From the IMG/VR virus record IMGVR_UViG_3300031957_002643, positions 248,001 to 312,000 of that record: 64,000 bases of DNA; one strand, written 5' to 3'. The notes under the pieces were generated by a model that did not search any database, was not told where the DNA came from, and saw nothing but the letters and a program-made list of their open reading frames with translations. This document shows, in pieces, positions 6,867 to 53,073 of this stretch (positions within the stretch are counted from its first letter, which is position 1; every line of letters begins with the position of its first letter). The translations under genes were made by a program, and so were the position numbers.

Positions 6867-6942
6867 GGCCCCGTAGCTCAGCGGTTAGAGCAGATGCCTC
6901 TAAAACATTTGGTCGTGGGTTCGAATCCCACCGGGGCCACCA
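6867..6942 (+). tRNA. tRNA with CTA anticodon (amber suppressor type)
   Basis: 76-nt cloverleaf; standard numbering gives GATGC-CTCTAAA-ACATT, so U33 precedes C34-U35-A36; C31.A39 mismatch; CCA; own promoter upstream. Confidence 0.8.
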
Positions 6943-7708: not shown

Positions 7709-8298
7709 TGTGTAAGGATTATACGAAACTCAAGTCTCTTGACGAACTTGGCTGTGCGATGATGAAATGTCAGCAGACCAAGACACAGGATGTGTTGGAA
7801 CACGGTTATTCCATTCACAATTACTTCCGCGATCTTAAAGATCACATTCTTTATGGTTCGGAACTGCAATACGAATGGAAACTACCGGATTGGATTTATG
7901 AAGAAAATCTCTGGGACCAACTTTTGGATTACCAGACGATCCGATCCTATCACATCTATCATGATTGTGGTAAGCCGTTCTGTCGATACGTTGACGATGA
8001 GGGAAGACAGCACTTCCCAAACCATGAAACCATCTCTGGCCAAGTGTGGCGACACATTGGGGGTGATGAGCAAATCGCTCGGTTGATGGAAATGGATATG
8101 GATATTCATCGCCTTCGTACTGATGGTGTTGAAGAATTCGCGTCCAGACCGGAAGCGGCAACCCTTTTGATCACTGGTTTGTGTGAAATCAATTCGAACG
8201 CTCGAATGTTCGGCGGTATTCATTCTACCAGTTTCAAAATCAAATATAAAAATTTGGCCAAGTATGGTGGTCGAATTGCTGAACGTCTTTGTGCGTAA
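7708..8298 (+). CDS. HD-domain phosphohydrolase
   Basis: YHIYHDCGKP motif; TAATG coupling to the PTH2 gene. Confidence 0.65.
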   Translation: MCKDYTKLKSLDELGCAMMKCQQTKTQDVLEHGYSIHNYFRDLKDHILYGSELQYEWKLPDWIYEENLWDQLLDYQTIRSYHIYHDCGKPFCRYVDDEGRQHFPNHETISGQVWRHIGGDEQIARLMEMDMDIHRLRTDGVEEFASRPEAATLLITGLCEINSNARMFGGIHSTSFKIKYKNLAKYGGRIAERLCA

Positions 8299-8381
8299 CT
8301 GGAAAGCCCTCAGAAATGGGGGCTTTTCTTTTATTCCCAATTGATGTAAGTATTCATGGAGAGAATAAATGGAGGAACAAA

Positions 8382-9395: not shown

Positions 9396-9701
9396 GTGTT
9401 GCTCTTTTTGTTTTTCTTTTTGCGCGTCCTTGTGGTGATGATACTGGCATATCTAGCTGTTTCATTCTTGGTGCTAGCCATCCGTTTCCTTATTGATAAA
9501 GACCGAGTTCTTCATGAAATCGAATTGGCGAAACTAAAGAGAGACGGTAGAGTCATCAATGAGACGTATGTTGATTTGGATGGTTCCATTGTTTATCACA
9601 GAACGGTTGGTGCCAAACGAGAGTATAACAAAAAGAAAAAAGAATTGCGTAACAAAAGAAACTCTGCTATCAATAGAAGTCTTTGGGGAAGACGCCCATA
9701 A
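9396..9701 (+). CDS. Membrane-anchored basic protein
   Basis: N-terminal hydrophobic helix. Confidence 0.5.
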   Translation: MLLFLFFFLRVLVVMILAYLAVSFLVLAIRFLIDKDRVLHEIELAKLKRDGRVINETYVDLDGSIVYHRTVGAKREYNKKKKELRNKRNSAINRSLWGRRP

Positions 9702-46073: not shown

Positions 46074-47381
46074 ATGCTCAAGACTTCACTCTATAAAGCG
46101 CCATCCGGTCAATTCATTGATTTGGATCGGATTCTGATTATCGATGTAGTAAAACATGATAGTGATTTTAATTATGTACATTTTGATGTAATTTTTCAAC
46201 TTATGGATAAGCCTGTTCATTATGGCTTCGAACCTACTGCGGAGATAGTCAATAGAGGTCGGGAACAAACCGAAGTGGAGGTAAAGGAGTTTGTTCGTAA
46301 CGAGCTGATTGAACTTGCTGAAAAAGAGCGAGATGATCTCATTGCTGCTTGGAAAAGCTATAAAGATGATACGTTGACTGGAAATGAAAATTTGATTATG
46401 CATGCGATTGAAGTTGTTGCTAAAGGAATGATCGATGAGTGATAGTCAAATTTTTGAACTGGTGGGCGACGCTGATTCGACGTGGTTCATCGATGTTGCC
46501 GATTTGGTTTATGTTTCGGAACTCAGCATCAAATCAGTAGAAGTAAGATTTTATTTGAGAACTAAATCATTGCCAGAAATAAGATTTGTATCCAGTGTAA
46601 CTATTCCGTATAGAATGAGTTTGACAGATGCGAGAACTCCCGACGAGATTGAAAAAATCAAATCAAATATCGAAAATAGAGATCGTTTGATAGAACGATC
46701 AAAACAAAATCGACTTGATCTGATTAAGGCGTGGCGCGATCACAGAAGTGGTGTAATGCTGGCGAATTTTTTAGAAAAAGAAATGGATAACAATAATGTC
46801 AACTAGCCCGATTTTTATTCTGTATGATGGTGAAGCCATCGATCTGGAAGAGATTTGTTATGTTTCCCTGCCATACATCAATGGGGATAGATTGAAATAT
46901 TATTGCCTGTCTAAAAGAACGAACAATAAAATGTTTGAAGATGTTCAACTTCCGAGTCAAAATAATGAAAAACGGTCACAACGAGTCAAGGAAGTCAAAG
47001 AGCACCGGAAAAAGTTGATCCAAGCATGGAGTGACTATAAGTCCGGTGTGATGTTGGCAAACCTCATAGAACAAGAGATTGCTAAAAATGAATAGTCCAT
47101 TTTTTGAATTCTGTGATGGTTCTGTTGTTGAATTGGAACAGGTCTATCGTGTGTCACAGCCATATGAAAGTAGTAGTTATGCTACTTTTTACTACGGTTT
47201 TACCTATAGAACAAAGGTGAATGATACTGAAATAGAAGTATCTATGAGAGTATTAGACACAGAAAAAGAAAATACCATTGAGATTGTGAATAAAAACAGA
47301 GAGGACTTTATTAAAGCACTGAATGATCATCGAAGTGGCGTCTTGGTTGCCACCCTTTTGGAAAAGGCCATTTCTGAATAA
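46074..47381 (+). repeat. Tandem array of four paralogous small ORFs (46074-46442, 46435-46806, 46796-47095, 47079-47381)
   Basis: Shared C-terminal LIxAWxD(H/Y)(R/K)SGV motif (shortened to LIAAWKSYK in the first) and similar N-termini. Confidence 0.75.
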
Positions 47382-48181
47382 TGTTCTGGATTGTTCAAGA
47401 AGATTTGTACAATGAGTACAAGTATGACGAATTCCTCAATGCTCTTGATCGTATGAATATCGATCACGTATTGGTGAAGCCGATTCCATTTACAAACACG
47501 CTCGTGAACGAAGATGAAATCCATATCGATGATTCTCAGCCGATTATTGTTTCGGGTTCTGTCTCATTAGTTCGTGTCGCCAGACGCCGTGGTTGGTTGC
47601 CGGGAAGTTTCCATGACCACGATTTCTTTTTTCAAGAGTGGCGAGATGGATTTGGAAAAGACAATTGTCTAAACGGGCATGCCAAAATCGTAAAGCTCAA
47701 AGATGCGACATTCAATGGTCATGATATCTTTGTTCGACCGATTTTGGATAACAAGTCCTTTTCTGGTGTAGTCATGAATCGAGAAGAATTTATGTCGTGG
47801 CAATCGCATTATGCGTATGTCGAAAGAACGGATGAATTTCAAACACTACATCAAGATACCGAAATCATGATGTGTCGGCCTAAGAACATCATGGCTGAAT
47901 ATCGATTTTTTGTCGCAGATGGAAAAGTTGTCACTGGCAGTCTTTATGTTCGTGGTCGTCGCGTTGTCTATGAAGAATGCCATGAAGAAGATGTTATCGA
48001 GTTCACGCAATCAATGGTAGATAAATTTCAACCAGCTAAAGCGTTTGTGTTGGACGTTGCAAGAATCGATGGTGGATTCAAAATTATCGAAGTGAACAAT
48101 TTCAATTCTGCGGGCTTTTATGCATGTGATGTCGTCAAGATAATTAATGCAGTAGAAGAAATGACTGAATTTTATTCTTGA
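47381..48181 (+). CDS. ATP-grasp domain protein (R2K/DUF4343-like)
   Basis: IFVRP..KSFSGVV..EYRFFVADGKVVTGS..FVLDVAR..KIIEVNNFNSAGFY. Confidence 0.8.
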   Translation: MFWIVQEDLYNEYKYDEFLNALDRMNIDHVLVKPIPFTNTLVNEDEIHIDDSQPIIVSGSVSLVRVARRRGWLPGSFHDHDFFFQEWRDGFGKDNCLNGHAKIVKLKDATFNGHDIFVRPILDNKSFSGVVMNREEFMSWQSHYAYVERTDEFQTLHQDTEIMMCRPKNIMAEYRFFVADGKVVTGSLYVRGRRVVYEECHEEDVIEFTQSMVDKFQPAKAFVLDVARIDGGFKIIEVNNFNSAGFYACDVVKIINAVEEMTEFYS

Positions 48182-48206
48182 CGAGAATATAACTACCGTA
48201 TATAAG
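48178..48206 (+). promoter_or_regulatory. Sigma70-type promoter
   Basis: TTGACG-N17-TATAAG. Confidence 0.75.
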
Positions 48207-48247
48207 AGTTTTCATCGGGATTGGCCCGCACGATTTGGAGAAATTAA

Positions 48248-48391
48248 ATGGCAAAGAAGACGAATGCATCGAATGCAAGCAATCGGCGTGATCCGGTGAA
48301 GAAGCGTACTTCCATCGGCAATTCTACTCGTTCGCGTCCGACGAACAAGCATTCGACGTTCAAGCGTACTCGCGGGCAGGGTCGTCCGTAA
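48248..48391 (+). CDS. Small Lys/Arg-rich protein (47 aa), not in the ORF track
   Basis: GGAGA SD; MAKKTNASNASNRRDPVKKRTSIGNSTRSRPTNKHSTFKRTRGQGRP. Confidence 0.75.
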   Translation: MAKKTNASNASNRRDPVKKRTSIGNSTRSRPTNKHSTFKRTRGQGRP

Positions 48392-48426
48392 GAGTTAAGG
48401 GAAACTAGGCGTCTGGCCAAGAGGAC

Positions 48427-48769
48427 GTAGGGTCAATCCGCCCAAGCGAAGCGCGAGATACCCGATAAGCTCAGTGTAGACATGATTAGATCGCTGCAAT
48501 GTTCGTGTCGTCGGTCTAGTGGAACTTTGCTGGTGGTAGGCGATAAAAAATCCTACCTGACAAGGATACAAGCAAAACGAACGTATATCGGTTTTGTCGT
48601 CGGTCAGGTACCATCAGTTAATACAGTTTGGTAGCAGAGCGCGGAATGGAATGCCTTTCGCGGGGTAAGGGCAGCGGAGTAATTGACCGCCAGCTAAATC
48701 CCCTCAAGCACCGGGCGCGAAGGACGAGAACAGAGACTCGTTAAGTGACAGTTTAGCACCTGATCCTAC
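48427..48769 (+). ncRNA. Candidate ~340-nt structured ncRNA, family unknown
   Basis: No ORF; terminal GTAGGGTCA/TGATCCTAC helix; internal GGTAGG/CCTACC and CGAG/CTCG hairpins. Confidence 0.55.
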
Positions 48770-48785
48770 CAATCCAATTTTCTTC

Positions 48786-48902
48786 TTGACTTATATCACT
48801 GGTACGTATATAAGTAAGAACACAGTCGGCAACAAAGATCGACAAGAAAACTGACAAATACTGAAAAAACTTCTTGACTTTTGTTTGTGTGTCCTATATA
48901 AA
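48786..48902 (+). promoter_or_regulatory. Tandem P1/P2-like sigma70 promoters
   Basis: TTGACT-N17-TATAAG (48786-48814) and TTGACT-N17-TATAAA (48874-48902). Confidence 0.8.
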
Positions 48903-48906
48903 GGTT

Positions 48907-48929
48907 ACAACGAAAGTTGCTCTTTGACA
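48907..48929 (+). promoter_or_regulatory. rrn-type antitermination signal: GAAA hairpin (boxB-like) plus boxA
   Basis: CAAC-GAAA-GTTG followed by TGCTCTTTGACA (48918-48929), one base from the canonical TGCTCTTTAACA. Confidence 0.7.
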
Positions 48930-51900
48930 TTGTTGGGAAATAAGTGAGACGAACCGATCTTCACGGGTCCATCGGACCTTTGATTAGCATGTATCTCTAT
49001 TGTTCTGCCTTAACAGACCTGTTCTTTACCGGGCAGAATGGTGCGAAGACGAGAGTAGAGACTCGATCCTTAGACTTGATGTGGAGTTTGCAAGCTGCCA
49101 CGAGATAAGGACAAACTCTGATGGCCCCTTGAAGGTCGGTTCGTTGGCAAAGCGTTGATCCGGGCGTGTAGATGGTGTGGACACCATACCGGATAACCCT
49201 TTAATAATCGCCTGACTTAAATATCGGGCTAACCCAGAAAGAAAACACTCCTAAAGAAATAAGGCGTAGTGTTCCTTCCGAGGCGATTAACAAGTTTTGC
49301 GGGATGATGGTGTAATGGAAACACGGTCTACAGTAGTAGGACATCTAGTAAGGTTCAATTCCTTACCCCTCGCATTTGAGAATTTGCATCTGACCCTGTT
49401 TTGGCTTGGTGACCGATAGCGCTAAGACCACCGCGTGTGGAGAAAAGGCGTGTGTAGGAGCTTCGTCTGAAACTGTGGCGACACGGCACTTTAAAGCCGG
49501 TGATGTAATGTGGATGGGCGTTTTTGGAAGCCACGATCCACCGCGTTGCAACTGAGAGCACATAAAGCCGACAGTACATCGGTAAAAGTGCAGCCCCAAA
49601 GGCCACGGGGAACCGAAAACATCTTCCGCAACGGTTTCTATAAGATGTGATCGGGCAGCGCGTTAAATCTTTATCTAGTTGATAGACTAATTGAAAGAGT
49701 GAAAGTACTTTCGAGAAAGTGGAACCTCTGCATCGATGAACTCATCTGAAATACCAATTGTAACAATCGCAAATGCTATAAAAACCGTGAGCAAGGAGAA
49801 TGGCCTTGACAGGCAATTGGTAGGAAGGATGTTTAGTAGTCGATATATGCGAAGCGAAGTGTAGAAGGTATGGAAACTTTAGTAAGGGGAAGTCGCCCGG
49901 ACAGCAGTTGCGATTTAAACCGGGAAATATTGGTTCGATTCCAATGAAACTAGGCCTCATTTGTGCGAATGCACACAACATAATCCGTGAGCAAGTGCTG
50001 GTTCGGGACGTGATACTAGTTAGTCACTGAACCTGTAAAATAAAGGCACCGATCCTTTCGAGGTGGACGCCACGACCTGACCGGCTGGTGTATGATAGGA
50101 AACACGCCCCTATTAACGGGGAATACGGTAGATGCAAGTTCTGCCCGGTCCAATAAATTCCTCTATCATGAGGATATGTAATTGCAGTAACGCCGATTAT
50201 GGTGATCGAACCTTACTGTAATAAATCCCGTTCATACCGGGTAAAAGGCCTAACCAGCCAGTATGACCGCATCGTGACTAGTGTAAAGCCCACATCTGAT
50301 TCGAACGGGTGTGTGGATAAAAGAAGCACGTCCCTCTTCGATAGGGCAAGTGTCGGTTGCAAGTCCGCCGCACGATGCAACAGGTTTTGGTGAGCAGTTG
50401 GTTTTGAAACCTTCGGAATGCCGACAGTCGTAGTAGCGCACGGCCACCACATTTGTTCTACTTAGGACCGACAAAACGATTGATCCCCATAATCTTTCGT
50501 ACAAAACGGTCGCCTACTGATGGAGTAGGAGAATTCGGATCATGAAGCCCACGAAAAGGGTGGATTGTTTCGGAGTATAGCAATCCGGGGCTTGATCTCT
50601 CCGGGGAACAATAGACTGGTGTGGAAATGCAGATATCTCAGCAGGGGACATCAATGCGCCATGTAAAAGGATGCGCGCTCCTGACCAGTTGAGTTCCGAA
50701 TTAAAACCATCGTTCGCCAGATGCATATGGCCAATCTTGGGAGAACACGTGCTGTGTCGCGGTGATTGCAGTAAATAATACGTGAGGTAAAAGTCCTAAC
50801 AACGCCGCGTCGTTTCAAAGAATGCGGTTCCTAGCACATTTGTGGAGTGGATAGGAGCAAAAGCCTGATGCCCATGACAAAGTTCTCTTTGCCCATCAGG
50901 AAATAGCATTTGGGGACTACCGGGAGAGTTCGGTGCTACATACGAGTCCAGACCGTGATGGTATGTTTTCCGAGATAAGCAAAGAAAACATGAAGGCCTC
51001 CATCATGGAACAGCGTACAGATGTCCTTTTTGTCTAAATGGCAGGGTTGATGCTTATCGTCTAATGTCGTGGCCGATTAGGACCTGAAATCGTATGTATT
51101 CTCGTGACGATGATGTAACCGTTAAGACACATCTTCGTTTATTGCATGCACAATGGTGGGAAGATCGGTTCTGTCAGACCGTGATTTGCCAGAGATGCTT
51201 GCTGCGAGAATGAAACTTGAAGTTCCTACATGCCCTGATGGCGAAGCCGGTAGGATTAAATTAGTTGGATGCGCTCAGCTTCAAGTTTCAAAGTTCCGCT
51301 AGTGCACATGCGGAAGCAAGTGTGTGAAGGTATCCGTCAAACGTAAAAGTTTTGGTCCCCTTCTGACCTGTATAAACTAAGACGCCAGAACACAACGTAA
51401 CAGGAGTTGTTTTGGCCATGGGTTAGCTACCATGACTTTGAGCGTCACCACACTTGCACAAGTTTTAGCTGCCACCATCGTATGGTTCGGACAGCCTATT
51501 GAATGAAATAGGAATAAGCAGTGATTGATCTGAAAGCCGTGATGATCAAATTAATAGAATCTGTGAACGAGTAAATGAAGCAAAAGTCATCAGGAGTGAT
51601 CATTACTGGTGGTGAGTAGTGAAACTGAAAGGGAACAAGGAGATCAAGCAGGGAGCAGGTCCACAACCTTTAGGGCGTCCGTGGAATTAGAGGTTCGAGT
51701 CCTCTTTTGGTCTATATTCCGGTTGCCGGGAATGAAATACTCGCCCCTGTTGTAAAGGGAAATGAGATAGCTGATCGCTTGATGCCTTGGCGGGTGGATG
51801 GTGTGATGTACGTGGCATTAAAGTTTCAGGACGTTCTTTTGTCGTTCTCTCCCCGATTAAAACGAGAGAACGTCCTGCATCCATATCAGGGAAAGGAGAT

Positions 51901-52010
51901 CATAACCGGGTCGGTACAAAGGAATGATCTCTGGTAGTGAGGATGGTAGTCCGATTAACCCCATGGACATTGCCCCCTGATCGTTATAACTCACTTATTT
52001 TCCAACAATG
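48928..52010 (+). ncRNA. Giant (~3.04 kb) structured non-coding transcript closed by a 21-bp terminal helix
   Basis: CATTGTTGGGAAATAAGTGAG (48928-48948) pairs with CTCACTTATTTTCCAACAATG (51990-52010); no credible ORF inside; many long stems, GNRA/UUCG loops and T-loop modules. Confidence 0.75.
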
Positions 52011-52031: not shown

Positions 52032-52436
52032 ATGGACATCTGGATCAAACACGACCTTTCACATGCACGTATCAAAAAGACCGAATCTTGGAATTATGAA
52101 CAGGATTGCGTTAATGGTATGTTGACGCCCGGTGATACTTTGTACGGTGTTCAACTTATTACATACGCATATGATTCATTTGGAAAATCAAAAGAGCCAT
52201 CAAAAACATGGCTTTATTTGACTGGTGATCCTACCGATCTTCTTGACTTAATCGATGAGATCGATGAATATCTGTCTTCTTATTCCGAAGATGAGTTGAA
52301 CCAATCCCAATTCGAGTATATCAATCTTGAAACTAAAAAGTTCAAGTTTCGCGATTCGGATAGATATATTGGAGATTTCAAGGGATGGGGCACATCGTAT
52401 GATTCTGTGAATATAAAGATTATCCCCGTTCTATAA
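52032..52436 (+). CDS. Hypothetical protein
   Basis: SD GAGGA directly after the terminal helix. Confidence 0.6.
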   Translation: MDIWIKHDLSHARIKKTESWNYEQDCVNGMLTPGDTLYGVQLITYAYDSFGKSKEPSKTWLYLTGDPTDLLDLIDEIDEYLSSYSEDELNQSQFEYINLETKKFKFRDSDRYIGDFKGWGTSYDSVNIKIIPVL

Positions 52437-52563
52437 GAGACCCCTGATCACACATCCTTGGCTCTGGTGATTTGGGTGTAACACCAAGGACAGCCCCCTT
52501 CGAGGGCTGTATGCAATCATATAATATTGACCGTATCAAGATTGGCCAACCAGTTAGATGCAG

Positions 52564-52591
52564 AAAAGGGCCGGGTTATCCCAGCCCTTTT
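52564..52591. terminator. Bidirectional terminator
   Basis: AAAAGGGCCGGG-TTAT-CCCAGCCCTTTT. Confidence 0.75.
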
Positions 52592-52593
52592 CA

Positions 52594-53073
52594 TTATTGT
52601 ACAAATTCGGAATTATAAGATGTGACAGTTTGCTTACCGTACTGATTGATTGATCTGTCATCATAGCAATCGATGACCTGCTTAACTCGGTTTCTGGCAT
52701 CGCCGTTATGTGTATCATCATACAATTTGAATTTAATACCCATGGCGGATTTCAATTCCAATGCACCGGTTGTTAACTCGTCGATACTTTTAGTGACTTC
52801 CACTCTTCCAGAGTCAATATATTTCGATGCAGACATTGATGCGTTCAAATCATGAAGCGTCTTGAGGGCATCATCAGAAGTTTCTAGAATTGCAGTGATC
52901 GTGTTATCAAATTGTTCATTGTGAGCACGAAGATGGTCTTCCCATTCATTATTTCTTTGTTTGAGATTTTCGATGGATTCGTTGATTTTGATTTCTTCAG
53001 CAGACAATTCTGGTTCTGGTTTGGAGAACCATCCGGTGACTGCATTCCATAAATGAGACAATGGATTTTTCAT
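52594..53073 (-). CDS. Hypothetical coiled-coil protein
   Basis: ORF track; start at MKNPL. Confidence 0.55.
   Translation of the reverse strand: MKNPLSHLWNAVTGWFSKPEPELSAEEIKINESIENLKQRNNEWEDHLRAHNEQFDNTITAILETSDDALKTLHDLNASMSASKYIDSGRVEVTKSIDELTTGALELKSAMGIKFKLYDDTHNGDARNRVKQVIDCYDDRSINQYGKQTVTSYNSEFVQ

What the first reader, a model, noticed from the sequence alone, without database searches (positions are those of the whole stretch)
48248..48769. Small basic-protein gene plus a ~340-nt structured RNA directly upstream of the giant RNA
Seen: a promoter (48178) drives a 47-aa K/R-rich ORF ending in RGQGRP, missed by the ORF track, and then an ORF-free segment closed by GTAGGGTCA/TGATCCTAC. 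Its 5' strand can alternatively pair as GGTCAATCCGC (48431-48441) with GCGG..ATTGACC (48674-48688), which is partly mutually exclusive and suggests a switch or folding intermediate. Inference: this may be a small RNA partner and an RNA-binding peptide of the 3-kb RNA, forming one ribonucleoprotein system.
Basis: partly seen in the sequence, partly recalled or inferred. Interest (0 to 1): 0.65.

Follow-up and report, generated by a model that had tools for sequence, protein, structure and literature searches.

The report
Basic phage peptide heading RNA operon
A real gene for a tiny, very basic phage protein sits at the head of a ribosomal-RNA-like noncoding operon in a marine jumbo phage, but the 340-base "structured RNA" behind it is missing from both known relatives and has no support as an RNA gene.

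Summary
The window lies in a complete 335.5-kb marine jumbo phage. The 47-aa ORF (48248-48391) is a genuine gene. It has a GGAG ribosome-binding site and a promoter of the phage's own sigma70-like class. Against its orthologue, dN/dS is about 0.16. It belongs to a large, uncharacterised family of about 45-aa phage proteins (200 clusters at 50% identity).

In about 85 other phage loci this gene is tightly packed among protein genes such as small terminase, nucleases and baseplate, with no RNA nearby. In the two relatives found (L002, L278), the peptide gene heads the same large ORF-poor RNA region. There its stop codon lies 19 and 5 nt from the next promoter. The window has 394 nt at that position, so the "340-nt RNA" is specific to this lineage.

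The segment's 9-bp closing helix is matched in 37% of shuffles, and the proposed alternative pairing has about zero ensemble probability. There is no Rfam or RNase P match and no homologue anywhere searched.

New context: the large RNA starts with a 17-mer identical to the rrn boxA of Alphaproteobacteria, and parts of it covary with L278.

Verdict: the peptide is real and the shared operon is plausible. The separate small RNA and the ribonucleoprotein idea are unsupported.

The parts
48178..48206 (+). Promoter P1: TTGACG, 17-nt spacer, TATAAG. Its -35 hexamer overlaps the TGA stop of the upstream R2K ATP-grasp gene.
   Evidence: It belongs to a genome-wide class of about 22 TTGAC...(C)GTATATAA sites.
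48237..48240 (+). GGAG ribosome-binding site, 7 nt before the ATG
48248..48391 (+). Gene for a 47-aa basic protein (P0001). It has 14 K+R and 1 acidic residue, pI 12.0 and charge about +12.6. It is a single copy in the genome.
   Evidence: It is called as a gene on the identical contig L015.
48392..48785 (+). ORF-free, GC-rich (0.51) untranslated segment between the peptide stop and promoter P2. It is specific to this lineage and absent from L002 and L278.
48427..48435 (+). 5' arm of the 9-bp 'closing' helix
   Evidence: Pair probability 0.84-0.999 when the segment is folded alone, but an equal or longer terminal helix appears in 37% of shuffles.
48761..48769 (+). 3' arm of the 9-bp 'closing' helix
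48714..48740 (+). 27-nt hairpin motif, repeated at 49040-49065 inside the large RNA (85% identical). These are the only two copies in the window, and L002 has none.
48786..48814 (+). Promoter P2 (TTGACT-17-TATAAG). Its -35 region resembles the promoter that lies upstream of the peptide gene in L002 and L278.
48874..48902 (+). Promoter P3 (TTGACT-17-TATAAA), 88 nt after P2. Together they form a tandem pair like rrn P1/P2.
48918..48935 (+). boxA-type antitermination element. It is 100% identical over 18 nt to L002:8462-8479, and its 17-mer is identical to the rrn leader of many Alphaproteobacteria. It is the only strict copy in the 335-kb genome.
   Evidence: Literature: PMC10250234.
48928..48959 (+). 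5' arm of a 32-nt leader-trailer-type helix that brackets 3019 nt. The 3' arm is at 51979-52010.
   Evidence: 81% complementary.
49672..49956 (+). Module of the large RNA conserved in L278 (72.5% identity, E 1.6e-40). It ends in a T-arm. All 57 predicted pairs are kept, 9 of them through changes on both sides.
52032..52436 (+). 134-aa ORF that follows the large RNA with no terminator in between. Its homologue in L002 directly follows the R2K gene.
52560..52596 (+). Strong hairpin plus U-run: the likely end of the P1/P2/P3 transcription unit

Best explanation
48248-48391 is a genuine, expressed-looking gene for a 47-aa, highly basic protein with no predicted secondary structure. It belongs to a large, uncharacterised family of stand-alone phage proteins of about 45 aa. 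The family consensus is MAK, a variable stretch, KKRTSIGxSxxSRPKNK, a short basic stretch, then YRGQGK, and some members match PHROG 516.

In this jumbo-phage lineage the gene has come to sit at the very head of an rrn-like noncoding operon. That operon has tandem sigma70-type promoters, a host-identical boxA, a leader-trailer helix and about 3 kb of modular RNA carrying tRNA-like T-arms. It is followed by a 134-aa ORF and a terminator.

P1 transcribes the peptide mRNA. No terminator follows it, so I infer that polymerase runs on through the 394-nt ORF-free stretch into P2/P3, boxA and the large RNA. The '340-nt RNA' is most likely a lineage-specific, dispensable untranslated spacer, or possibly a variable add-on. 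The 608-nt unit of P1 + peptide + spacer is bracketed by TTCTTGAC direct repeats, which are the -35 regions of P1 and P2. It is not an independent, conserved structured RNA gene, and the proposed switch helix does not form.

From charge, the lack of predicted secondary structure and the family's neighbours, I infer that the peptide acts as a general binder of nucleic acids or other polyanions. I do not infer a dedicated subunit of this RNA.

Shown: the gene is real, the family exists, the promoter belongs to a class, no terminator intervenes, the segment is absent from two relatives, and the boxA 17-mer matches host rrn leaders. Inferred: read-through, the spacer status and the binding mode.
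For: Gene reality. It has GGAG and ATG. The orthologues are L002:8213-8356 (48 aa) and L278:1127-1264 (46 aa), both with the same ...RGQGRP-type C-terminus. Against L002, pN is 0.32 and pS 0.73, giving dN/dS of about 0.16.

Family. There are 200 representative clusters, nearly all stand-alone and 37-54 aa long. P0007, 54% identical to the window's peptide, matches phrog_516 at 1.8e-5.

Promoter class.

No intrinsic terminator lies between 48392 and 48785 on the + strand. The first good one is at 52573.

The segment is not conserved. From the peptide stop to the next -35 hexamer is 394 nt in the window, 19 nt in L002 and 5 nt in L278. No part of 48392-48785 matches L002's 101-kb record, L278, the rest of the genome, the phage collection or 401 alphaproteobacterial genomes.

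By contrast, the flanking features are conserved. These are the peptide gene (72% DNA identity to L278), the boxA 18-mer (100% to L002), and blocks of the large RNA (64-76% to L278, with covariation).

Structure. The helix is no better than 37% of shuffles, and the alternative helix has a probability of about 0. There is no Rfam hit even at E<=10.

Family context elsewhere points to DNA and virion functions: small terminase, nucleases, 2OG-Fe(II) oxygenases, baseplate, tail fibre.

AlphaFold2 with 62 sequences gives no secondary structure and a pLDDT of 66.
Against: The segment's GC (0.51) is well above the genome's (0.423) and close to that of the large RNA (0.467) and the tRNAs (0.55-0.59). 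This is what a functional RNA in an AT-rich phage looks like.

The segment shares a 27-nt hairpin motif with the 5' domain of the large RNA.

Most of the large RNA itself is also not alignable between the three phages. Absence from relatives is therefore weaker evidence in this fast-evolving, modular system.

The thermodynamic test has no power here. A proven covarying module scores only z = -1.0.

The peptide gene has stayed glued to the RNA unit's promoters in three phages whose synonymous sites are saturated.

No expression data exist.
Confidence: 0.55

Rival explanations
1. The 340-nt segment is a functional, lineage-specific structured RNA module. It would be one more variable module of the modular large-RNA system, made from P1 transcripts and possibly processed out at its closing helix.
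For: GC is 0.51 against 0.423 for the genome. The + strand is rich in purines and in G, like the large RNA. The segment shares a 27-nt hairpin motif with the large RNA's 5' domain. The closing helix dominates the predicted ensemble. The large RNA is itself modular and mostly variable between relatives, yet contains genuinely covarying modules that are also closed by a terminal helix. The z-score test cannot exclude this reading.
Against: It is absent from both relatives at the orthologous place. No homologue was found anywhere searched. There is no T-arm, unlike the conserved modules. A 9-bp helix is expected by chance in 37% of shuffles. It lies upstream of boxA, outside the leader-trailer helix. 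No Rfam family matches.
Confidence: 0.2
2. One reading: the basic peptide is the dedicated protein partner (chaperone, scaffold or packaging factor) of the 3-kb RNA, forming a phage ribonucleoprotein.
For: The peptide gene lies immediately 5' of the RNA unit's promoter and leader in all three lineage members. It is a single copy in the genome. It has extreme positive charge and is predicted to lack secondary structure, like ribosomal-protein tails. The operon imitates an rrn operon.
Against: The same family occurs in hundreds of phages with no adjacent RNA, tRNA array or boxA, next to at least 22 different neighbour families that are mostly DNA- or virion-related. Four other phage fragments that carry the same 17-mer (three of them heading tRNA arrays) lack the peptide, though they are only 10-59% complete (control). 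Shared gene order among three related phages may simply be inherited. Only one rearrangement, with breakpoints outside the cassette, separates them. There is no match to any solved ribosomal or RNP protein.
Confidence: 0.15
3. The pair is an RNase P-like, or other known, small RNP: a catalytic RNA of about 340-380 nt plus a small basic protein, which would suit a phage with 44 tRNAs.
For: The sizes fit. The phage carries 44 tRNAs and a tmRNA, so it invests heavily in translation RNAs.
Against: The bacterial RNase P type A and B covariance models give nothing at this locus, while ringing in 11 of 14 control genomes. A cmscan of all 4227 Rfam families at E<=10 found nothing in the segment. The peptide matches no Pfam or NCBIfam family, including RnpA and the ribosomal proteins. 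The RNA is absent from relatives that keep the peptide.
Confidence: 0.02
4. The peptide is a lambda-N-like antitermination factor: a small basic protein without predicted secondary structure, encoded next to a nut-like site, that acts on the hairpin-plus-boxA leader of the RNA unit.
For: It sits next to a promoter-proximal hairpin plus boxA in the window and in L002. It is small, basic and lacks predicted secondary structure. Lambda N works with boxA/boxB and the Nus factors (PMC10250234).
Against: The hairpins before boxA are unrelated in the window (4-bp GAAA hairpin) and in L002 (about a 15-bp stem). L278 has only a degenerate boxA. rrn-type boxA antitermination needs no phage factor. The conserved core TSIGxS..S.P.NK is not an arginine-rich helix, and no helix is predicted. 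Most family members have no boxA nearby.
Confidence: 0.05
5. The segment is decayed or unrecognised coding DNA. It could be a remnant of a gene that arrived with the peptide gene, or an antisense ORF.
For: The unit of P1 + peptide + segment is bracketed by TTCTTGAC repeats, like an inserted moron. In other phages the 245-370-nt gaps after the peptide gene hold small ORFs of 50-66 aa. Minus-strand frame 1 has only two TGA stops and one TAA.
Against: There is no protein similarity to any ORF flanking the peptide gene in about 100 loci. The 50-aa + strand ORF has no homologue. Every + frame has 6-8 stops of mixed kinds. TGA ends 68 of 178 long ORFs in this genome, so nothing in the genome indicates TGA recoding, and I therefore did not read it through.
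Confidence: 0.05

Closest known systems
PHROG 516-type small basic phage proteins (function unknown)
   Same: They are 40-50 aa long, start with MAK, share the core K-x-TSIG-x-S-x-x-S-R/K-P-x-N-K and a C-terminal (Y/T)RGQG(K/R), and are stand-alone ORFs in marine phages.
   Different: The window's own peptide does not reach the phrog_516 HMM. The link runs through P0007. Here, and in two relatives, the gene has its own promoter and heads a noncoding RNA operon, instead of being translationally coupled inside a protein operon.
Bacterial rrn operon leader (tandem P1/P2 promoters, boxB-boxA-boxC, leader-trailer helix)
   Same: P2 and P3 form a tandem pair 88 nt apart. A 17-mer is identical to alphaproteobacterial rrn boxA, which lies 190-290 nt upstream of 16S in 6 of 6 loci checked. 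A 32-nt helix starts just after boxA and brackets 3019 nt, roughly the length of a 23S rRNA (PMC10250234).
   Different: The enclosed RNA is not rRNA: there is no LSU or SSU match at E<=10. A protein gene and a 394-nt spacer sit upstream of the promoters. Beyond boxA there is no similarity to host leaders.
Phage tRNA arrays with large ornate RNAs (GOLLD, ROOL)
   Same: Other viral contigs carry the same promoter-plus-boxA leader in front of tRNA arrays, and in L111 in front of a GOLLD RNA. The large RNA here contains tRNA-like T-arms. GOLLD and ROOL are phage-associated and tRNA-linked (bioRxiv 10.1101/2024.12.08.627333; PMC5737381).
   Different: No GOLLD or ROOL match occurs here. GOLLD and ROOL are reported as RNA-only complexes, with no dedicated peptide. 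The 340-nt segment has no T-arm.
RNase P holoenzyme (about 350-400-nt RNA plus a small basic protein)
   Different: The covariance models do not match, the protein is unrelated, and the RNA part is not conserved.
Lambda N / nut antitermination
   Same: A small, basic protein without predicted secondary structure is encoded beside a boxA-plus-hairpin site.
   Different: There is no arginine-rich helix. The hairpin is not conserved. The boxA is of the host rrn type, which works without a phage factor.

Membership tests
PHROG 516-type small basic phage protein family | Stand-alone ORF of about 40-50 aa | tested here: met
   It is 47 aa. Of the 150 best representative clusters listed, almost all are 37-54 aa.
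PHROG 516-type small basic phage protein family | Conserved core (K-x-TSIG-x-S-x-x-S-R/K-P-x-N-K) and C-terminal RGQG(K/R) | tested here: met
   Alignments A3 and A4. T21, S22, I23, G24, S26, K34, G43, Q44 and G45 are invariant or conserved in 90% or more of 62 sequences.
PHROG 516-type small basic phage protein family | Significant match to the phrog_516 HMM | tested here: not met
   P0001 gives no PHROG hit at E<=1, and a six-frame search of the genome gives none. The homologue P0007 (54% identical) matches at 1.8e-5, so membership is transitive only.
Structured RNA gene (any Rfam family, including tmRNA, 6S, GOLLD, ROOL, riboswitches) | Covariance-model match | tested here: not met
   Nothing matches in 48392-48785 at the gathering score or at E<=10.
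Structured RNA gene (novel) | Conservation with compensatory changes in relatives | tested here: not met
   The segment is absent from L002 and L278 at the orthologous place, and no homologue was found. The same test is met by the neighbouring module 49672-49956.
Structured RNA gene (novel) | Folding energy or helices beyond chance | tested here: inconclusive
   z = -0.67, and a 9-bp terminal helix appears in 37% of shuffles. The positive-control module also scores only z = -1.0, so the test lacks power.
RNA switch | Two mutually exclusive helices of comparable stability | tested here: not met
   The closing helix has probability 0.84-0.999. Every pair of the alternative helix has probability 0.0 in the ensemble.
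RNase P RNP | RNA matching the RNase P covariance models (P4 core) | tested here: not met
   RF00010 and RF00011 give no hit at this locus, while the controls ring in 11 of 14 genomes.
rrn-type antitermination leader (context of the finding) | boxA sequence as in host rrn leaders, promoter-proximal, on the transcribed strand | tested here: met
   The 17-mer at 48919-48935 is identical to that of more than 120 genomes, mostly alphaproteobacterial. It lies upstream of 16S in 6 of 6 loci checked. It sits 17 nt after the -10 hexamer of P3.
rrn-type antitermination leader (context of the finding) | Binding of NusB/NusE and resistance to Rho | not testable with these tools
   This needs biochemistry or reporter assays.
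Dedicated peptide-RNA ribonucleoprotein | Peptide and RNA co-occur across relatives | tested here: inconclusive
   They co-occur in 3 of 3 phages of this lineage. Across the wider family there is no RNA next to the peptide gene in about 85 loci, and 4 other phage fragments carrying the boxA 17-mer have no peptide.
Dedicated peptide-RNA ribonucleoprotein | Physical binding | not testable with these tools
   No RNA runs exist for this DNA. The complex-prediction tool handles protein-protein pairs only.

The most novel reading that the evidence does not exclude
The cassette is a phage-built imitation of a host rRNA operon whose products assemble into a particle. The conserved 47-aa basic peptide would be the protein subunit or chaperone of a modular 3-kb RNA that carries tRNA-like modules. 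The 340-nt segment would be an extra, lineage-specific RNA module made from the peptide's own transcript.
Probability: 0.12. Interest if true: 0.8.

Novelty: new member of a known kind. Interest (0 to 1): 0.4.

Why it matters
The specific claim, a new 340-nt structured RNA paired with an RNA-binding peptide, does not hold up. It should not be carried forward as an RNA gene.

Two results do carry forward. First, the peptide belongs to one of the more widespread families of tiny phage proteins still without a function: hundreds of marine viral contigs and 200 clusters at 50% identity. This lineage offers an unusual, testable context for it. Second, the context itself is informative. The large neighbouring RNA is transcribed behind a copy of the host's own rrn boxA. 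This points to an alphaproteobacterial host. It also suggests that phages borrow rRNA-type antitermination to make long untranslated RNAs, including tRNA arrays and GOLLD in other contigs. That strengthens the separate 'giant RNA' finding and tells whoever follows it up which promoters, leader and boundaries to use.

Tried and rejected
- **Alternative genetic codes for the ORF-free region.** No + strand frame opens under TAG or TGA read-through. TGA ends 68 of 178 long ORFs, so no recoding is indicated.
- **Known RNA families.** Rfam at the gathering score and at E<=10 gave nothing. RNase P types A and B gave nothing. ARAGORN tRNA/tmRNA at normal thresholds gave nothing.
- **DNA similarity of the cassette or segment.** There was no match to 50,697 phage records, the rest of the genome or L002's 101-kb record. 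In 401 alphaproteobacterial genomes only short hits at chance level appeared, none on an RNA feature. A viral-contig scan for the repeated hairpin motif found 0.
- **Decayed-gene hypothesis.** tblastn of 4771 ORFs from about 100 peptide-bearing loci against the segment gave only noise. The 50-aa ORF has no homologue.
- **Peptide function by homology.** Pfam, NCBIfam, PDB profile searches, ESM Atlas, cluster names and tblastn against cultured phages gave nothing, or only 'hypothetical protein'. AlphaFold2 gave no fold, so I ran no fold search. A literature search for the motif returned only irrelevant text matches.
- **Expression.** No RNA run holds this DNA.
- **More relatives.** Pattern scans with the R2K alignment found only L002. 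A scan for the TRGQGRP-stop ending gave only chance hits. A protein search with R2K then found L278. Relatives with 44-45% R2K identity have no cassette.
- **Thermodynamic z-scores.** These were rejected as a criterion after the positive control failed.
Full report
**Setting.** The window is bases 248001-312000 of a complete 335,552-bp virus record with direct terminal repeats, from seawater metagenomes. The genome encodes 44 tRNAs, among them CUA and UCA suppressors, and a tmRNA. Between the R2K ATP-grasp gene (47381-48181; Pfam R2K_3/R2K_2) and a 134-aa ORF (52032-52436) lie 3.85 kb with no ORF longer than about 85 aa on the + strand. GC there is raised to 0.47-0.51, against 0.423 for the genome. 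The finding covers the first 600 nt of this cassette.

**Checking the observation.**
- P1 reads TTGACG-17-TATAAG from 48178.
- GGAG lies at 48237-48240.
- The ATG ORF at 48248-48391 encodes 47 aa with 14 K+R and 1 D (pI 12.0).
- An ORF-free stretch runs to 48785. All six frames carry 3-8 stops, and its longest + strand ORF (50 aa) has no homologue.
- The 9-bp pairing 48427-48435/48761-48769 (one G-U) and the alternative 4+7-bp pairing with 48674-48688 both exist.

The promoter is credible. The motif TTGAC-N15-19-TATATAA occurs three times in 64 kb, against 0.06 expected, and all three copies lie in this cassette. A slightly relaxed form defines about 22 sites across the genome with a shared (C)CGTATATAA -10 region.

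The helix is not credible as evidence. Folded alone, the segment does adopt it (pair probabilities 0.84-0.999). However, an equal or longer terminal helix occurs in 37% of dinucleotide shuffles, and every pair of the proposed alternative helix has probability 0.0. There is no sign of a switch.

The overall fold z-score is -0.67, and no 160-nt window in the segment is below -1. I do not count this against the RNA. A module of the neighbouring RNA that is clearly conserved and covarying (see below) scores only -1.0.

**The peptide is a real gene in a big family.** A word-indexed search found six homologous clusters of 43-48 aa at 50-71% identity. A profile search of 1.84 billion representatives found 200 clusters at E<=0.001. 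Almost all are stand-alone proteins of 37-54 aa. The 62-sequence alignment has a strongly conserved core (TSIG.S..S.P.NK) and a C-terminal YRGQGK. One member matches phrog_516 (function unknown) at 1.8e-5, but the window's peptide itself does not.

Nothing further identifies the family. Pfam, NCBIfam, PDB, ESM Atlas and source names give nothing or only 'hypothetical protein'. AlphaFold2 predicts no secondary structure (pLDDT 66).

Against its orthologue in L002, synonymous sites are saturated (pS 0.73) while pN is 0.32, so dN/dS is about 0.16. It is therefore a protein-coding gene under purifying selection, present once in the genome.

**Where the family lives.** In about 85 loci the gene is packed against neighbouring protein genes. 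Gaps are typically -38 to +14 nt. Where a gap of 245-370 nt follows, it holds a low-GC ORF of 50-66 aa, not an RNA.
- The neighbours fall into at least 23 upstream and 22 downstream families.
- The commonest upstream neighbour is a small terminase subunit.
- Others are 2OG-Fe(II) oxygenases, PD-(D/E)XK, SNase and HNH nucleases, baseplate wedge, tail fibre and virion proteins.
- Only 7 loci other than the window's own copy have any tRNA within the fetched flanks, none adjacent to the peptide gene. The only boxA motif among them lies on the opposite strand.

**The lineage comparison.** Two relatives were found through the R2K protein.
- *L002* (IMG/VR contig of 101 kb; R2K 69% identical). The R2K gene is followed directly by the homologue of the 134-aa ORF, so the whole cassette is missing from that slot. 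It sits instead upstream of R2K, in this order: promoter, a 48-aa peptide gene (8213-8356) ending TRGQGRP, a second promoter whose -35 hexamer starts 19 nt after the stop, a long hairpin, an 18-mer identical to window 48918-48935, then about 1.5 kb of ORF-poor DNA with several T-arm motifs and one borderline tRNA-like element.
- *L278* (Logan contig of 7.7 kb; R2K 65% identical). The order is the same: promoter, a 46-aa peptide gene (TTG start at 1127; 72% DNA identity to the window's), a second promoter 5 nt after the stop, then about 3.8 kb of ORF-poor DNA before R2K.

In the window the same interval, from the peptide stop to the next -35 hexamer, is 394 nt. The '340-nt RNA' fills it, and no part of it matches L002, L278 or L002's 101-kb record.

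The window's P2 resembles the promoter that precedes the peptide gene in both relatives (TTGACTTATA...). The 608-nt unit of P1 + peptide + segment is bracketed by TTCTTGAC, the -35 regions of P1 and P2. I read this as a local rearrangement or insertion between promoter repeats. Its direction, gain here or loss in the relatives, cannot be decided with three roughly equidistant genomes.

More distant R2K-bearing phages (44-45% identity) have neither the peptide nor the cassette near R2K.

**What the cassette is.** The conserved 18-mer is an rrn-type boxA. These were overwhelmingly Alphaproteobacteria (Sphingomonadales, Maricaulales, Rhizobiales, Rhodobacterales and others), and many hits lay at contig ends. 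In 6 of 6 loci checked it lies 190-290 nt upstream of the 16S gene on the same strand. It is the only strict copy in the phage genome.

Three further features fit the rrn pattern:
- The tandem promoters P2 and P3.
- A small hairpin before boxA.
- A 32-nt, 81%-complementary helix that starts right after boxA and closes 3019 nt later.

Together these reproduce the published architecture of rrn operons: boxB-boxA-boxC, leader-trailer helix, and antitermination against Rho on untranslated RNA (PMC10250234).

The enclosed RNA is not rRNA, and beyond boxA nothing resembles host leaders. It is, however, a real RNA. Three blocks align with L278 at 64-76%. For 49672-49956 this is better than the R2K coding DNA aligns (72.5% against 67%). 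In that block all 57 predicted pairs are kept, 9 of them through changes on both sides, and the block ends in a T-arm.

The same 17-mer also occurs in four unrelated viral contigs. In three of them (L111, L116, L117) a promoter-plus-boxA leader precedes tRNA arrays, with a GOLLD RNA in L111 and a group I intron in L117. All four fragments lack the peptide (the search recovers the peptide in the window's genome and in L002's record).

No intrinsic terminator lies between P1 and the hairpin-plus-U-run at about 52573. The simplest reading is one unit: P1, peptide, spacer, P2/P3, boxA, large RNA, 134-aa ORF, terminator.

**Interpretation.**
- *Settled:* the peptide gene is real.
- *Plausible:* it is co-transcribed with the large RNA, and that arrangement is conserved in this lineage.
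- *Untested:* it acts specifically on that RNA. The family's distribution, which suggests a general, mobile, DNA- or virion-associated small basic protein, argues against this.

The 340-nt segment has only two points in its favour: composition, and one 27-nt motif shared with the large RNA. Against it stand its absence from both relatives, the lack of any homologue or family match, and helices no better than chance. I therefore treat it as a dispensable untranslated spacer or variable add-on (confidence 0.55). I give 0.2 to its being a functional lineage-specific module, because most of the large RNA is itself variable between these phages.

Other readings fared worse. RNase P-like, lambda-N-like and decayed-gene readings were considered. 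The first and third were tested and found wanting. The second has no positive evidence.

**Limits.**
- There are only two relatives, and only one of them carries alignable large-RNA blocks.
- No expression data exist.
- L002's record is 30% complete, so the segment could lie elsewhere in that genome.
- tblastn against cultured phages was probably blunted by the low-complexity filter.

Noticed in passing
window 48918-48935; loci L140-L219: The leader of the large RNA carries a 17-mer identical to the rrn boxA of many Alphaproteobacteria, where it lies 190-290 nt upstream of 16S in 6 of 6 loci checked. This points to an alphaproteobacterial host and to hijacking of the host's rRNA antitermination machinery.
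   Followed up: yes
L111:1177-3022(-), L116:3635-4089(+), L117:9494-10058(-): Unrelated viral contigs use the same promoter-plus-boxA leader in front of tRNA arrays. L111's array contains a GOLLD RNA (187 bits), and L117's starts with a group I intron. This may be a general phage strategy for long untranslated transcripts.
   Followed up: partly
window 49672-49956 vs L278:3304-3586: A 285-nt module of the large RNA is 72.5% identical between the two phages. All 57 predicted pairs are kept, 9 of them through changes on both sides. It is closed by a terminal helix and ends in a GGTTCGAnTCC T-arm. Blocks 49279-49369 and 49384-49615 are also conserved, the latter in L002 too (via L278).
   Followed up: partly
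window 49299-49374, 49929-49945, 51642-51712; L002 9154, 9410, 9599-9675, 9828: tRNA-like elements with canonical T-arms but aberrant anticodon or acceptor parts, + strand only. ARAGORN calls them only at lowered thresholds. One in L002 scores 29.7 bits against the tRNA model and has a 12-nt anticodon loop.
   Followed up: partly
window 51214-51279 vs L002:8064-8135: A 70-nt element is 74% identical in the two phages but sits in different places: inside the large RNA here, and between tRNA-Met and the peptide promoter in L002. Its 5-bp stem CCUAC/GUAGG becomes GCUAC/GUAGC, which is a compensatory change.
   Followed up: no
window 48516-48529 and 51289-51302: There is a 14-nt complementarity (13 of 14) between the 340-nt segment and the large RNA. 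By my own estimate about 0.2 such pairs are expected by chance, so it is not significant on its own.
   Followed up: no
window 6867-6942; genome G000:C1:145422-145493 and 126887-127266: The phage carries suppressor-type tRNAs with CUA and UCA anticodons, and a tmRNA. TGA and TAG are nevertheless used as ordinary stops of long ORFs (68 and 23 of 178).
   Followed up: no
window 46074-47381: Four tandem paralogous ORFs of 99-123 aa share a C-terminal motif (LI.AW.D.(R/K)SGV.LA). They occupy the slot where L002 has the RNA cassette. The DNA at 46920-47320 folds unusually well (z -3 to -5).
   Followed up: no
window 52440-52680: The convergent-gene gap has very stable hairpins (z down to -4.9) and terminator-like sites on both strands. 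It is the probable end of the cassette's transcription unit. The weak PrrB/RsmZ-like hits there fall far below threshold.
   Followed up: no
L278:2256-2795(-): The orthologous RNA region of L278 contains a called 179-aa minus-strand ORF with no Pfam hit. This could be a real inserted gene or a chance ORF on the stop-poor antisense strand.
   Followed up: no
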